From NCBI GenBank assembly GCA_003693705.1, contig RBZT01000278.1, forward strand, positions 69,347 to 133,346: a DNA stretch of 64,000 nt, read 5' to 3'. Source of the DNA: Polymyxa betae A26-41. Its lineage: Eukaryota > Protista > Endomyxa: Phytomyxea. Positions 39,340 to 44,258 of the stretch are shown here, one piece after another. The notes beneath the pieces are model-generated. The model made no database searches. It saw only the letters and a program-made list of their open reading frames with translations, and was not told the origin of the DNA. Position 1 is the first letter of the stretch; each line of letters starts with the position of its first letter. The position numbers and the translations under genes are program-made.

Positions 39340-42300
39340 TCAAATTTCACTAAGCGGCTGTCCAGGTTCATCGTCACTGCCCTCCAAATCGATATCGCTA
39401 GAATCGCCGCCCTCATTGTCGTTTTCGTCATCCGCTTCTTCATCTTCGTCGCCCTCTTCTCCAGAAGATTCAGATTCAACATCCATAGGAGCGTCTTCGT
39501 AATCAGAAACAGGAGCAGGAGCCCTGGAGAAGCTTAACATCAAATCTTTTGCAAATTCTAAAATGCTTACGAGAATGCTGATGACTGAACACTAGTGTCA
39601 GGCTGGAATGGAGTAATAGGTTGAACAACAGCTAGTTCACATTTAAAACCGGAGACGCCTTAAGCAGAGAATCCCCAACCTGGTTGACTTGCCGATTTTT
39701 CGTTTTCAACCTTCCCGCTACGAGCAGCAGCAGATGGGTCTTCCATTAAAAGCGACATGACAAGCGGATGATTCAAACCAAACTTCTCGACTCCATTGAT
39801 GGTAGATCGTTTTCGCGTTGTGCTTCTTCGCGTATCCAGCCTATATCACGTTAATTGATTTCACAATCTATAACCAATTTGATACCTGGTTTCGATCTGT
39901 TTCCACACATGTGTCGGTTTGTCGGCTATTATTGGCTCATCGGGAAGATCAGCGCAGGTGACTTTAAATCTAACGCGCCCATCTTCTTGCAATACCTCAC
40001 AAAGATATTTACATCTCCGACTGGGATCAGAAAGCGATGGGTAATCACGTTCTGAGGAAAATTAAGACGAGGCACTGAAACCAAAGAATCTAACTAAAAC
40101 CTGATTGAAACCCGACAGGGAACACATGTTTTCCATCTCGGAAATCTCTTCCTGGAGGGACAGTTCCTAGAGATGATTGTCAGATCAGGAAGTGCCTGGA
40201 ATAATTATTTTACCCAGATTTAAAATTCGCAATGAGGACGTCACTTGAATGGGCATATTCGGGGAGCCATCAGGACCAAACGTCGGTTGGCTAGCGATTT
40301 CGCCTCCTGAGAACGCAGAAATCAATACAACCTAATGATCATCATGCAGCCAATTACTTTGGTTGGGATTTCTTGGAACATATCTTGACTTTTGGGAAGA
40401 GACATCAAATTCTAACCCATGCCGAGAGATTAATTGCTGCATAGGATCAGATCTTGTGAATAATAATGGGAGTAAATGAGACATCAGTTACCTGTGCACG
40501 CTTCACAAGAATCTTCGATTCCGAAGGTATAGATAAACCAGATGAAGCGAAAGGGAGGTCAGCATCTGCCCAAACAAGATTCCAACTGGCAATGCCATAT
40601 TTAACAACAGCCTGGAGAAGAGCATAGTCCATAACCGGGGTCCAGTGGGGAGCCCATTCATTGAATGGTGGCTCCAGCGGAGGAGAGTTTTCACATAAAG
40701 TTTCTTTATGCTGCTCTACCAGTGCTCGCAATGATTGGAATCTGATTAAAGAAATTCAGAACAGAAGAATACCAGTCAGAAAACAAATTACAAATCTATT
40801 CTTTCCCTGATTTTAACAGCGACACCGAACGAGAAGAGTAATGCTTCATCAGTAATTGGGGATGAATCTGAATATCCGTCATCTGGAGACTCTCTGTTCA
40901 CCTGTGCCAGCAATCGCTCAAAACCCATTGCTTCAAATAAACAAGACACATACAACAATACGATCGACAGCCTCCAAAAATTTCTGGTAGTACTGATCCA
41001 AGTCGTTATCCGTTTTTGATGAGAGCATGGGCTGAGTGGTTCGCAGAAGCTGCCACAAGTCAGGTCGACCTTGTGCAATGATGCCACGTTGAAACGCGGC
41101 TTGGTCCTTGCGAGTCCAGCCTAATGTGTTCTCTGTTTTAGCACCGATCTTCTTTACAGAAGCCTTCTTAGGGACAGTTTTCAACTGCATCAAACTAAGT
41201 GTAAACATAAAATCACAACCACCAAAAGAAGTTACCCTTTTGGCGTCTTCGTTGTTCAGCTCAGGGACTTCTCTTCGCTTCTTGCCACCTTTTTGGGAGC
41301 TATGCTTGCCGCGCTTTACTTTGAGTAATTCCAGTATTCGCTTCAATCTTCCAATTAATGCCAAGTGCTGAGGCCACTCAGGAAGGGAAGACTGCTGATC
41401 AGATTCGCTCTGCTGGGTAGCGTTTTCGTGAGTAGGTAACGTAGGTTGAGTTGTTTCTGGGATCGTCTGCGAAACTGCGTCTTCATCGTCGTCAAGGTCG
41501 CCTTTGGGAGCATCTGTATAGATGGTGAACAAAAATGTCGAACATAAAATTTATCATACCTAGCCTGGCAGCCCACTTTCCTTTGAAGCACAGCGACTCG
41601 TCATTCAAAATTGCATTGAACTCGCCGAATCCATGACGGTATATTCCGATGCATAGATCCAGATCCTCCTGGGTATCCCAATGCGGACCCAGCGATCTTC
41701 CTGAGTGCGATTTGGGCTTCTGTGTGAAAAAAATTGAAGCGGATTACCTTTTATTGAACCTATGCCGTCCAGAAGACGCGACTCGCCAAACAATTCAATA
41801 CAAGCTTTCAGCTCCTATACGGAAAATAAGGAGCTAACAACCGAAACTATTTGTGAGGTACGTATAAGAGTATCAACCGAGTGCTCCATTTCTTTACATT
41901 CTTTTGCAAAGACGACCAGCCTGCCGATATCGAATGAATAAAGCAAATACTATGTCAAAGTGCAAATACCTGAAAGAGATGGTTCTGGTACATCGGGACT
42001 GCAAAGCTCAATCGGAGATGAGTTCAAGATTTCAATCAGACCGGTCTTAAGAGCGGAATCATCACAGTTCTCAACGAGTTGCTGAACTAGCTGAGATGTG
42101 TAAATCTGTAAATTAGCTAGAGTGTAATCACGGTCATCAAGTGCCTCAGATAGAACATCCCATCGACCATAACTGAAAGCTCATTAATGACGCCCATCCT
42201 TAAAGATGCACAGAAGGGCATACCCATATCGCATTAATGCACATCGAACTTTTTCTCGAGACGTTCGGCTCCATTTTTTTCCAGCCGTTGATGTCATCTG

Positions 42301-42801
42301 AGTAATACGTATTCCCTGGGGTCCGTTTTTGGACAATTCACTCCCTTCGTCGTCTTCACTTGCGCTGGTTGATGTCGCGACATTTTTCGGCAGCAAAAAG
42401 TATATTAATCTAGGCCCTATCTGCATGATAATAAATAAGAATCGTTGAAGTCTAAATAGAATCCGACTTGAATGAGGGTTCTACTTCTTAGTTGAGCAGG
42501 AGGATTTGATGGGCCGACAAATTCGCCATCAACAAAAACGCCGTTCTTTGACATGCAAGACAGTTCAAACGCCTGCTTGGGCCGATTAAATTGTATACGG
42601 GCGTGGCATCTCGAACTATAATCGACTTAAATTCGCCCGATAACATTGCGATATAAAAACGAACATGTTCTTATGCTCGCCCAGAACGATGTCAGCAGAT
42701 CCGGCATGACGACCGAGCGTGACGTTGTCAGTCGTCATATAATACACAAAATTGTTGTCGCCGAGCAGCTTGGCGAAGGCGACGACCTCATTCGATGTCA
42801 T
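39340..42801 (-). CDS. FHA-domain protein fused to CHD6-9/Kismet-like C-terminal modules, no ATPase
   Basis: FHA: AFAKLLG...VTLGR...SRCHARIQFN...SKNGVFVDG...IQIG; CHD-type motifs HWDTQEDLDLCIGIYRHGFGEFNAILNDESLCF, WPQHLALIGRLKRIL, WTRKDQAAFQRGIIAQG, HWTPVMDYALLQAVVKYG..DADLPF; acidic tail. Confidence 0.8.
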
Positions 42802-44258
42802 GATTGTGACAAATCTGTGTAGGAATTCGGAGGCGGGACTGGGCCAGAAGCTGGAGGTAGCGTATATAAGGAGTGGCCTTTGCTGCGGTGCTTGCGTCCT
42901 GCCACTCTGCGAGAATCCATCTGGATCGGATCGGCGCATGTTAGGTGTTCGGATGAACCGCTTCCTATGCCTGTTTCTTGTAGCGCTCAATCCGCCCTGC
43001 AGAATGCTCTACCGTTGAGCAGCAGTTGAGTGTCACGAGCCCTGCAATGAGCGTTGGTTTTTTATCGAACTTCACATTGTCATGTATTGACTCTGGAGGT
43101 TCAACTTCCCTGCCGCTTTTGAAACTCTTATTTGACCGTGGTTAAGCTGCTCCTTCAGAAAAACAAACGGTGGGCATGTACTACCTACAGCATTGTTAAT
43201 CGGTGCAGTAGTTCTAAACAGTCCAATTTTGTTTAGATGATGCCAGCTTCGAATGTCCAACATTCAAAAAAACTGTCGGCGATGACAATTTTGTTATACG
43301 TGTATCTTCCTCAGCATAAAAGAATGACTATGTAAACTATACAGAGCTATCTGTTTAAATGCAAAAACTCACGAATCCGTGCCCGACAGCACCTGTTGCG
43401 GATGAGAATGCAATGTTAATTAAACCTTCGTTTCGAATTTATATCACACACGTCGACTTGATTCCAGCAGATCTGCAACTAAAGAATGTGATTGTGGAGT
43501 CAATTCTGATTGTTATAGAACCCCCGACATATGGCAGACTCAATAGAGGATCTTGCATTCTGCAATTAAAATCTTTATTTAATTGATGTGAAAATCGTTA
43601 GAATTCAATGCTCTGATTATTGTACTTGAAATGAGATTTAGGATTTAACACAGCTTCTCGAGCTGAATTCTTCCCATATTCGACATTTTCGACATTGATG
43701 GTAGCTGTTATTTATGAAACATAATCATTAGTCTGGCTGTCGATGTTGACCCCAAGACACGAAGCTAAGTAAAGCCTTAAGTAGATGCTTTCTGCATTCC
43801 CAGTTTAACAAAAGCAGCTTCAAATAATAACGCAAGAGCAGGGAGTTCAACCTTGTTTTCGACTTGAAAGTGAAACTGGAGATGTCGCTGTTACAGAAAT
43901 AATTCTATTTTGATTGATAGCATCATTTCAAATGTCTCGTTAGATTTAGATAGATATATATGCCCATTCTTCGGGACCAAATTGCGTCTTCCATGCGATT
44001 TCGTTGCCAGCTGAGTTGTTTGATGGATAAATGGATCCCATATTAGACCTGTTTGGAATGTTTCGTTCTTGTCAAATTTGCTGAAGCCAGTTGTCGTATG
44101 ATTCCTTTTAGTTACAGATGAAACCTCAGATTGCCCACCGATTATTACTGCACGATACCTAATCTGGAACGAATAGTTTCATTGGACGATGTTAGGTTGA
44201 TAGTCAGTTAGTGCAAAGCCAAAACCCTGATATTATTGCCTGTTGCACTTGAGCATTC

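What the first reader, a model, noticed from the sequence alone, without database searches (positions are those of the whole stretch)
39340..42801. FHA domain fused to the whole post-ATPase half of a CHD7/Kismet-type remodeller, with no chromodomains or SNF2 ATPase
Seen: after the FHA come, in order, WSRTSREKVRCALMRYGYGRW; HWDTQEDLDLCIGIYRHGFGEFNAILNDESLCF (~41585-41685); WPQHLALIGRLKRILE (~41335-41380); WTRKDQAAFQRGIIAQG..SSKTDNDLDQYYQKFL; PITDE..KIRERIDL; HWTPVMDYALLQAVVKYG..DADLPF. Known: these match the order and consensus of the SANT/SLIDE-like modules that follow the helicase in CHD6-9 (e.g. WW..D..LL.G..KHG....I..D..LCF, WP...L..RL.R, WTR.E..DF.R....G). FHA domains bind phospho-Thr. Inference: a phosphorylation-responsive chromatin adaptor, or half of a split remodeller whose ATPase is supplied in trans or which competes with full-length CHDs. 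I know of no described protein with this architecture.
Basis: partly seen in the sequence, partly recalled or inferred. Interest (0 to 1): 0.8.

Follow-up and report, generated by a model that had tools for sequence, protein, structure and literature searches.

The report
FHA protein with CHD remodeller tail
A real, conserved gene of the beet-root parasite Polymyxa betae joins a phospho-threonine reader (FHA) to the whole non-catalytic half of a CHD chromatin remodeller (two SANT-SLIDE units plus an FYR module) and has no motor; this domain combination is undescribed and probably acts as a phosphorylation-dependent chromatin adaptor.

Summary
On the minus strand, 42801 to 39340, lies one intact gene: 18 exons, 17 GT-AG introns of 45-55 nt, and an 876-codon frame. 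No RNA reads could be laid. The splice model rests on exon-by-exon colinearity with the Plasmodiophora brassicae ortholog (56% identity).

The genome is Polymyxa betae. The protein reads: canonical FHA, two tandem SANT-SLIDE units, FYRN-FYRC, acidic tail. There is no chromodomain and no SNF2 ATPase.

The same layout occurs in uninterrupted ORFs: a Polymyxa paralog and two intronless homologs. So the FHA and CHD-like parts are not separate genes.

The closest relatives outside the family are full-length protist remodellers with chromo-SNF2-helicase, then the same modules, then FYR (profile E 9e-34). The post-FHA part is colinear with their whole post-ATPase half. "CHD7/Kismet-type" is only loosely right: the CHD6-9 Pfam domain is sub-threshold here and there is no BRK.

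Function is inferred as a phospho-dependent chromatin adaptor. A split-remodeller reading stays open. Two Polymyxa CHD ATPases resemble the CHD-FYR group but stop matching it at the point where the FHA proteins start.

The ortholog is already in UniProt, uncharacterised, and I found no paper on it. The scan also noted this stretch in an overlapping window.

The parts
39340..42801 (-). Whole coding region: 18 exons, 17 GT-AG introns of 45-55 nt, 876 codons
   Evidence: Phase and stop check. Exon-by-exon colinearity with ortholog P0006 and with the family HMM.
42380..42801 (-). FHA domain (exons 1, 2 and the start of exon 3). The canonical Gly-Arg, Ser-x-x-His and Asn-Gly positions are present.
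   Evidence: Pfam FHA at 34.8 bits on exon 2 alone. Residues read from the exon translations. The ortholog model matches many solved FHA domains at Z 13-16, rmsd about 2 A over about 95 residues.
41560..42279 (-). SANT-SLIDE unit A (end of exon 3 to exon 7): a SANT-like helix bundle, a spacer helix, and a SLIDE-like HTH
   Evidence: Pfam HTH_CHD1_Hrp3 at 31.4 bits on exon 7. Ortholog model residues 13-270 match the human CHD1 DNA-binding domain 4b4c at Z 14.4 with 179 of 187 residues aligned.
41236..41513 (-). Exon 8: acidic stretch, a conserved Trp-Pro helix, and a lysine-rich (NLS-like) linker between the two units
   Evidence: Colinear with CHD-FYR HMM positions 375-514 together with exon 9. 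Charge profile.
40492..41184 (-). SANT-SLIDE unit B (exons 9-11): a CHD6-9-type tri-helical domain followed by a second SLIDE-like HTH
   Evidence: Pfam HTH_CHD6-9 at 23.8 bits (sub-threshold) and HTH_CHD1_Hrp3 at 19.1 bits. Ortholog model residues 310-497 match yeast Chd1 DBD 3ted at Z 12.8 and the CHD4 SANT-SLIDE 8d4y at Z 10.7. A PDB profile search hits the Chd1 SLIDE at E 4.9e-6.
39680..40306 (-). FYRN-FYRC module (exons 13-16)
   Evidence: Pfam FYRN at 24.3 bits and FYRC at 3.4e-3 on exon 15. In the ortholog, FYRN scores 63.1 bits and FYRC 38.2 bits. BLASTP against the FYR region of a CHD-FYR remodeller gives E 9e-15.
39340..39631 (-). Low-complexity, strongly acidic C-terminal tail (exons 17-18; the last exon has net charge -26 over 60 residues)
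   Evidence: Charge count. Acidic tails are also present in P0003, P0005 and P0006.

Best explanation
The gene encodes an 876-residue nuclear chromatin protein that descends from a CHD-type remodeller. In it, the chromodomain-ATPase half has been replaced by an FHA domain.

Shown here:
- One intact gene with the order FHA, two tandem CHD-type SANT-SLIDE units, FYRN-FYRC, acidic tail.
- Conservation of this layout in Plasmodiophora, in a second Polymyxa paralog (without FYR) and in at least two other unidentified eukaryotes.
- Homology and colinearity of everything after the FHA with the complete post-ATPase half of full-length chromo-SNF2-(SANT-SLIDE)x2-FYR remodellers of protists.

Inferred:
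- The protein cannot move nucleosomes itself.
- It sits on nucleosomal or linker DNA, or on histones, through the SANT-SLIDE units and the basic linker.
- It uses the FHA, which keeps the canonical phospho-threonine-binding residues, to dock onto a phosphorylated partner.
- It uses the FYR module and the acidic tail for further protein or histone contacts.
- Overall it is a phosphorylation-dependent chromatin adaptor or scaffold.
For: Gene model.

Single-gene status: the paralog has a 399-aa ORF carrying FHA plus CHD modules, and the intronless homologs P0003 and P0005 do the same.

Ortholog Pfam hits: FHA 8.5e-13, HTH_CHD1_Hrp3 x2 3.7e-17, CHDCT2 1e-7, FYRN 1.8e-17, FYRC 1.6e-9.

CHD derivation:
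- The family profile finds P0010 at E 9e-34. P0010 is the C-terminal part of a 1657-aa ORF with SNF2, Helicase_C, HTH_CHD6-9 (57.9 bits), HTH_CHD1_Hrp3, FYRN and FYRC, with a Chromo ORF upstream.
- Colinear BLASTP segments link the ortholog to that ORF.
- Further full-length members exist.
- A CHD-FYR tail HMM maps the window exons colinearly at positions 131 to 927.

Fold: two SANT-SLIDE units with Z 14.4, 12.8 and 10.7 to the CHD1, Chd1 and CHD4 DNA-binding domains. The next hit is ISWI at 7.5 and generic Myb domains score 6.7 or less. The 13 best Foldseek hits are all Chd1/CHD4 DNA-binding domains. The FHA fold scores Z 13-16.

Precedent for FYR proteins as non-catalytic partners of SNF2 remodellers: the T. 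brucei ISWI subunit FYRP (PMC4646403). Atlas clusters also combine FYR with INO80E or Iec3.
Against: - No transcript evidence for this gene was obtained.
- All structure work was done on the ortholog, not on the window protein.
- DNA binding is not shown. SANT-SLIDE unit B of the ortholog is acidic (net -14, pI 4.6) and unit A is neutral. That pattern fits histone or protein binding better than the basic Chd1 DNA-binding domain.
- The FYR part was not modelled with confidence (pLDDT about 30).
- No partner, phospho-ligand or localisation is known.
Confidence: 0.6

Rival explanations
1. Split remodeller. The protein is the detached DNA-binding and regulatory half of a CHD-FYR remodeller. It works in trans with a Polymyxa CHD ATPase that lost this half, and the FHA provides phosphorylation-gated docking onto the motor subunit.
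For: Polymyxa has three chromo-SNF2 genes.
- The one on C316 is a CHD1 ortholog with its own SLIDE HTH.
- The two others (C825, C798) show no Pfam domain after Helicase_C.
- Those two match the CHD-FYR tail HMM only at positions 7-105 and 3-93. The FHA proteins start matching at about position 131.
- The C825 ATPase piece is 55% identical (about 265 bits) to CHD-FYR ATPases, against 40% (165 bits) to the organism's own CHD1.
- No full-length CHD-FYR gene was found. The only other FYRN locus is a PHD/KMT2-like gene.
- There are two tail-less CHDs and two FHA-tail paralogs.
Against: There is no physical or expression link, and the genes are on different contigs. The C825 tail is long and carries lysine-rich, AT-hook-like stretches, so it may bind DNA by itself. 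C798 keeps a weak first SANT-like match. Divergence could hide modules. The assembly is about 91% complete by CEGMA (PMC6328671). In the one case where a homolog has an SNF2 neighbour (L008), that neighbour is not CHD-type. The subfamily of C825 and C798 was judged only from pairwise scores, not from a rooted tree with CHD1, Mi-2 and CHD7 references.
Confidence: 0.22
2. Competitor or decoy. The motor-less tail occupies the same nucleosome or linker sites, or the same FYR partners, as CHD remodellers and so damps their activity.
For: It retains the substrate-binding half but no ATPase. ATPase-less isoforms acting as dominant negatives are a known principle for remodellers (my own knowledge, not tested here).
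Against: No full-length CHD-FYR remodeller that it could compete with was found in this genome. The conserved FHA and the long-term retention of two paralogs argue for a positive function of its own.
Confidence: 0.08
3. Two neighbouring genes (an FHA gene and a Myb/SANT gene) wrongly joined, or a generic Myb-repeat protein with no specific CHD ancestry.
For: No RNA evidence was obtained. The HTH_CHD6-9 hit in the window gene is below Pfam's cut-off. SANT/Myb folds are common.
Against: The FHA and the modules lie in one uninterrupted ORF in the paralog and in the intronless homologs. Exon junctions abut residue by residue on the ortholog. The profile search gives E 9e-34 to a true CHD tail, with full colinearity including FYR. 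CHD DNA-binding domains stand well above generic Myb hits in the fold search.
Confidence: 0.03

Closest known systems
Protist 'CHD-FYR' remodellers: chromo x2, SNF2, Helicase_C, two SANT-SLIDE units, FYRN-FYRC. Examples are P0011 (MMETSP0472, labelled Tiarina), the TARA scaffold ORF L012:1298-6268, and P0012-P0016 and P0021.
   Same: Everything after the ATPase is shared: the same modules in the same order, including the terminal FYR. These are the closest sequence relatives outside the FHA family (E 9e-34).
   Different: They carry chromodomains and a complete SNF2 motor, and P0021 also has PHD and bromodomains. The window protein has an FHA in that place and cannot hydrolyse ATP. In a tree of the shared half, three FHA proteins form their own well-supported group (99/97). 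The divergent paralog is unplaced.
Animal CHD6-9 / Kismet (CHD subfamily III)
   Same: A SANT-SLIDE-like region follows the motor (review PMC8559672). The Pfam CHD6-9 tri-helical domain is found above threshold in the CHD-FYR relatives (57.9 bits) and consistently below threshold in the FHA family.
   Different: There are no BRK domains, no ATPase and no chromodomains, and FYR is not a feature of CHD6-9. I could not align directly to a CHD7 sequence. None was reachable by the tools and none is in the PDB for this region.
CHD1/Chd1 and CHD4 SANT-SLIDE DNA-binding domains (PDB 4b4c, 3ted, 8d4y)
   Same: Both units share this fold (Z 10.7-14.4, 155-179 residues aligned). Sequence profile hits reach the SLIDE helix, and Pfam HTH_CHD1_Hrp3 is above its cut-off.
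   Different: The unit is duplicated in tandem. Unit B is acidic rather than basic. It is not attached to a motor.
FYR-domain accessory proteins of remodeller complexes (T. brucei ISWI partner FYRP; TBRG1/NIAM)
   Same: These are non-catalytic chromatin proteins that carry FYR. FYRP co-purifies with an SNF2 ATPase (PMC4646403). The TBRG1 FYR structure 2wzo is hit by the family profile at E 2e-3.
   Different: They have no FHA and no SANT-SLIDE units. There is no detectable orthology outside the FYR module.
FHA-bearing chromatin proteins (e.g. FOXK/Fkh forkhead factors; MCRS1 of the INO80/NSL complexes, from my own knowledge)
   Same: An N-terminal or single FHA is coupled to a DNA- or chromatin-binding part. 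FHA-forkhead proteins were the only other hits of the full-length search, through the FHA alone (P0008, P0009).
   Different: The DNA-binding part here is a CHD tail, not a forkhead. Similarity is limited to the FHA.

Membership tests
FHA domain (PF00498) | Profile match above the curated cut-off | tested here: met
   Exon 2 alone scores 34.8 bits against a cut-off of 20.7. The ortholog scores 49 bits.
FHA domain (PF00498) | Beta-sandwich FHA fold | tested here: met
   Tested on the ortholog model only: Z 13-16, rmsd 1.6-3 A over 88-105 residues, to more than 40 solved FHA domains.
FHA domain (PF00498) | Conserved phospho-threonine-contacting residues (Gly-Arg; Ser-x-x-His; Asn-Gly) | tested here: met
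   Read directly in the translations of exons 1 and 2. G27, R28, S44 and H47 are invariant in the family alignment. The Asn is lost in P0005.
FHA domain (PF00498) | Binding of phospho-threonine peptides | not testable with these tools
   Needs a peptide-binding assay.
CHD chromatin remodeller (SNF2 family) | SNF2 ATPase plus Helicase_C motor | tested here: not met
   No SNF2 or Helicase_C hit in any exon or anywhere on contig C594. The protein is therefore not a CHD remodeller, only derived from one.
CHD chromatin remodeller (SNF2 family) | Tandem chromodomains | tested here: not met
   None of the 151 Chromo matches in the genome lies on C594. None is found in the exons.
CHD-type SANT-SLIDE DNA-binding domain | SANT-SLIDE fold | tested here: met
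   Two units in the ortholog model (pLDDT 73). They match 4b4c at Z 14.4, 3ted at Z 12.8 and 8d4y at Z 10.7, well above ISWI (7.5) and generic Myb (6.7 or less). Foldseek agrees but weakly, best E 1.4e-3.
CHD-type SANT-SLIDE DNA-binding domain | Profile match to the CHD SLIDE HTH (PF23588) | tested here: met
   Exon 7 scores 31.4 bits against a cut-off of 27. The ortholog scores 62.6 bits with two stretches.
CHD-type SANT-SLIDE DNA-binding domain | Binds linker DNA | not testable with these tools
   The charge profile is ambiguous: unit A is neutral, unit B is acidic, and the linker is basic.
CHD subfamily III (CHD6-9/Kismet) | CHD6-9 tri-helical domain (PF23078) | tested here: inconclusive
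   The window exon scores 23.8 bits, below the cut-off of 27. P0003, P0006 and the paralog score 16-19 bits. The full-length relatives score 28-58 bits.
CHD subfamily III (CHD6-9/Kismet) | BRK domains | tested here: not met
   No BRK hit in any exon, ortholog or CHD-FYR relative.
FYRN/FYRC (FYR) module | Adjacent FYRN and FYRC profile matches | tested here: met
   In the window, FYRN scores 24.3 bits (cut-off 24) and FYRC is sub-threshold on one exon. In the ortholog, FYRN scores 63.1 and FYRC 38.2 bits.
FYRN/FYRC (FYR) module | FYR alpha+beta fold | tested here: inconclusive
   This region of the full-length ortholog model has pLDDT of about 30. Only a sequence-profile hit to TBRG1 2wzo at E 2e-3 was found.

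The most novel reading that the evidence does not exclude
A naturally split CHD remodeller that is reassembled on demand. In plasmodiophorids an ancestral chromo-SNF2-(SANT-SLIDE)x2-FYR enzyme was broken just after the motor. The motor half survives as a tail-less CHD (C825 and/or C798). The substrate-recognition half acquired an FHA, so that it rejoins the motor, or is targeted, only when a threonine is phosphorylated. This would make nucleosome sliding directly kinase-gated.
Probability: 0.2. Interest if true: 0.8.

Novelty: new variant of a known kind. Interest (0 to 1): 0.55.

Why it matters
CHD remodellers are understood as single polypeptides in which the C-terminal SANT-SLIDE region senses linker DNA and tunes the motor. 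Here that entire sensing half exists as a free-standing, conserved protein coupled to a phospho-reader.

This gives a natural experiment on what the CHD tail does without its motor. It also gives a possible example of remodeller subunit fission with kinase control.

The work also exposed a class of protist CHD enzymes that end in an FYR module. I could find no description of this class, and it is the evident source of the tail.

Plasmodiophorids are unculturable crop parasites whose chromatin biology is almost unknown, so a lineage-typical chromatin factor is a useful marker and entry point.

Tried and rejected
- **RNA evidence.** The run search found only DNA holders. Four RNA runs with the same species label gave no reads, so this was no test.
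- **Pfam family search for PF23078 in the own genome.** It found nothing, not even the window gene, so it was uninformative.
- **Alternative splice choices.** For the stretch 41720-41970, a 270-nt intron or the acceptor at 41720 fails on phase or size. The model with two small exons and the acceptor at 41701 fits the paralog and the ortholog. For intron 9, introns of 31 or 37 nt were rejected in favour of 52 nt. This agrees with the database fragment P0001.
- **P0002 and P0004** from the exhaustive search are bacterial low-complexity false positives.
- **P0017, P0018 and the Atlas cluster** of about 921-aa 'HTH+FYR' proteins looked like further motor-less forms. The ORF upstream of P0017 carries chromo-SNF2-Helicase_C and overlaps it in another frame with continuous HMM coordinates, so these are truncated gene calls of full-length enzymes.
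- **The SNF2 gene head-to-head with P0005** is not CHD-type.
- **The extra HTH_CHD1_Hrp3 hit on C375** is ADA2 (ZZ+SANT). The second FYRN locus on C811 is a PHD/KMT2-like gene.
- **PDB best-hit typing of the C825 ATPase** was uninformative, because CHD1 and CHD4 scored about equally and no CHD7 motor is in the PDB.
Exons were searched one by one, and the database ortholog served as the whole-protein proxy.
Full report
**What is there.** The region 39340-42801 holds a minus-strand eukaryotic gene with very short introns. I derived exon borders from GT-AG sites and frame continuity, and checked them without joining the exons. There are 18 exons and 17 introns of 45-55 nt, all GT-AG. All split codons are sense codons. 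Nothing interrupts the frame from ATG 42801 to the stop at 39342-39340. The CDS is 2631 nt, or 876 codons. Exons were searched one at a time by reference, and whole-protein work used database homologs.

**Whose genome.** The assembly has 27,085,814 bases in 1,001 contigs. This matches the published Polymyxa betae draft of 1,001 contigs and 27,085,946 bp (PMC6328671). A 206-aa database fragment that is 100% identical to exons 9-11 is filed as a 'Beta vulgaris' hypothetical protein on a 720-nt contig. It is evidently parasite contamination of the beet assembly.

**Is it one gene?** RNA reads could not settle this. The four RNA runs offered under the same species label gave no reads at all, so this was no test. 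Comparative evidence does settle it.
- The Plasmodiophora brassicae ortholog P0006 (939 aa, 'FHA domain-containing protein' in UniRef) aligns exon by exon. Seventeen of the 18 exons hit consecutive, abutting stretches at 56% identity overall.
- A second Polymyxa locus (contig C839) has a single uninterrupted 399-aa ORF that runs from the second half of an FHA domain through the CHD-like modules.
- Two homologs on intronless contigs of unidentified eukaryotes (P0003, 821 aa; P0005, 725 aa) carry the FHA and the modules in one ORF.
- A family HMM places the window exons colinearly from position 3 to 773.

The reading of two mis-joined genes is therefore excluded for practical purposes.

**Domains.**
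- *FHA.* Exon 2 alone scores 34.8 bits. The Gly-Arg, Ser-x-x-His and Asn-Gly positions are present. The ortholog model matches more than 40 solved FHA domains at Z 13-16.
- *Middle part.* Pfam finds HTH_CHD1_Hrp3 twice and HTH_CHD6-9 once. HTH_CHD6-9 is below the cut-off in the window gene (23.8 bits against 27) and in all FHA-family members. A family profile against the PDB hits the SLIDE region of yeast and human CHD1 (E 4.9e-6 to 6e-5) and the C-terminal region of CHD4.
- *Fold of the middle part.* An AlphaFold model of ortholog residues 125-625, built on a 14-row alignment, has mean pLDDT 73. It contains two separate SANT-SLIDE units. Model residues 13-270 match the human CHD1 DNA-binding domain (4b4c, Z 14.4, 179 of 187 residues). 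Residues 310-497 match the yeast Chd1 DNA-binding domain (3ted, Z 12.8) and the CHD4 SANT-SLIDE (8d4y, Z 10.7). The next hit is ISWI at 7.5, and generic Myb/SANT domains lie at 6.7 or below. The 13 best Foldseek hits are all Chd1/CHD4 DNA-binding domains, though with weak E-values.
- *C-terminal part.* After the two units come FYRN-FYRC (ortholog 63 and 38 bits; window exon 15 at 24.3 bits) and a strongly acidic tail.
- *What is absent.* No Chromo or SNF2 match lies on this contig.

**Where the tail comes from.** The exhaustive single-sequence search with exons 8-9 found only the organism's own fragment and two relatives at E 0.001 or better, so the family is small and divergent. The profile search found, besides the ortholog, P0010 at E 9e-34.

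P0010 turned out to be a truncated call of a 1657-aa ORF on a TARA Oceans scaffold. That ORF reads SNF2, Helicase_C, a SANT-like module, HTH_CHD1_Hrp3, HTH_CHD6-9 (57.9 bits), HTH_CHD1_Hrp3, FYRN, FYRC, and a Chromo ORF lies upstream. BLASTP of the ortholog against it gives three colinear segments that cover the whole post-motor half:
- 139-187 to 619-667
- 272-591 to 1001-1287 (E 9e-10)
- 657-796 to 1422-1563 (E 9e-15)

A search with that tail found more full-length enzymes of the same build. P0011 comes from an MMETSP transcriptome. P0012-16 come from marine assemblies. P0021 has extra PHD and bromodomains. An HMM of their tails maps the window exons colinearly from position 131 to 927.

The label 'CHD7/Kismet-type' should be softened to 'CHD subfamily-III-like, specifically the protist CHD-FYR class', because there is no BRK domain and FYR is not a CHD6-9 feature. 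In a tree of the shared half, P0006, P0003 and P0005 form a supported group (99/97) apart from the remodellers. The very divergent paralog is unplaced.

**Other apparent motor-less forms.** P0017, P0018 and an Atlas cluster of 237 proteins looked like further motor-less versions. They are truncated gene calls. The ORF just upstream of P0017 carries chromo-SNF2-Helicase_C and continues into it across a frame change with continuous HMM coordinates.

**How it probably works.**
- *Shown:* the architecture and its ancestry.
- *Inferred:* without a motor it cannot slide nucleosomes. The SANT-SLIDE pair and the lysine-rich linker should hold it on nucleosomal or linker DNA, or on histones. The intact FHA should dock it onto a phospho-threonine site. 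FYR and the acidic tail should provide further contacts.
- *Caveat:* unit B is acidic (net -14) and unit A neutral in the ortholog, unlike the basic Chd1 domain. Histone or protein binding is therefore as likely as DNA binding.
- *Precedent:* FYR proteins as non-catalytic remodeller partners have a precedent in the T. brucei ISWI subunit FYRP (PMC4646403). Atlas clusters also combine FYR with INO80E or Iec3.

**The split-remodeller idea.** Polymyxa has three chromo-SNF2 genes.
- C316 is a clear CHD1 ortholog (588 bits to human CHD1) with its own SLIDE HTH.
- C825 and C798 show no Pfam domain after Helicase_C.
- C825 and C798 match the CHD-FYR tail HMM only at positions 7-105 and 3-93, with a weak 154-181 match in C798. 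They stop about where the FHA proteins begin.
- The C825 motor piece is closer to CHD-FYR motors (55% identity, about 265 bits) than to the organism's own CHD1 (40%, 165 bits).
- No full-length CHD-FYR gene was found. The only other FYRN locus is a PHD/KMT2-like gene.

This pattern is what a gene fission would leave, but it is circumstantial. The C825 tail is long, Ala/Glu-rich and carries lysine-rich, AT-hook-like stretches, so it may bind DNA itself. The genes are unlinked. I have no rooted motor phylogeny. I give this reading about 0.2.

**Novelty.** The ortholog sits in public databases as an uncharacterised protein. The same stretch was also noted by the scan in an overlapping window (s1-693353). 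Full-text searches found no paper describing FHA plus CHD tail, or CHD plus FYR. I class it as a new variant of a known kind: known domains in an undescribed and evolutionarily informative combination. Interest is moderate to good, and would be higher if the split-remodeller reading proves true.

Noticed in passing
L005:5567-7715 (-) = G000:C839:505566-507714: A second, very divergent Polymyxa paralog: FHA plus both SANT-SLIDE-like units, largely in two long ORFs (399 and 198 aa). No FYR module was detected. P0005 from another eukaryote has the same FYR-less layout.
   Followed up: partly
L012:222-6268 (+) (TARA scaffold); also P0011-P0016, P0021, L013:2616-10248: A class of full-length protist CHD remodellers ending in FYRN-FYRC (chromo x2, SNF2, Helicase_C, two SANT-SLIDE units, FYR; one member with PHD and bromodomains). 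I found no description of it in the literature searched. Gene callers often cut these genes into a motor part and a tail part.
   Followed up: partly
L010:5126-6483 (-) = G000:C825, downstream of the ATPase: The Polymyxa CHD closest to the CHD-FYR motors ends its similarity right after the conserved post-helicase motif. It continues into Ala/Glu-rich low complexity and lysine-rich, AT-hook-like stretches instead of SANT-SLIDE.
   Followed up: partly
window 40492-41200 (exons 9-11): GenBank KMS93294.1, filed as a Beta vulgaris hypothetical protein on a 720-nt contig, is 100% identical to this Polymyxa gene fragment. It is parasite contamination in the sugar-beet assembly.
   Followed up: yes
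L008:1481-7178: In the unidentified eukaryote that carries P0005, the FHA-tail gene lies head-to-head, 67 nt apart, with a 1150-aa SNF2-domain gene. That gene is only about 26% identical to CHD motors, and no Helicase_C hit was reported for it, so it is not a detached CHD motor.
   Followed up: yes
window 42802-42990: An in-frame upstream ATG near 42937 would add about 45 residues. The ortholog starts at the position equivalent to ATG 42801, so the shorter start is preferred. The upstream stretch overlaps a separately noted candidate RNA (s1-693524), which I did not examine.
   Followed up: no
L016:2912-5148 (+) = G000:C811: The only other FYRN-bearing locus in the assembly is a PHD x3 / zf-HC5HC2H / FYRN gene, i.e. 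a trithorax/KMT2-like methyltransferase candidate.
   Followed up: partly
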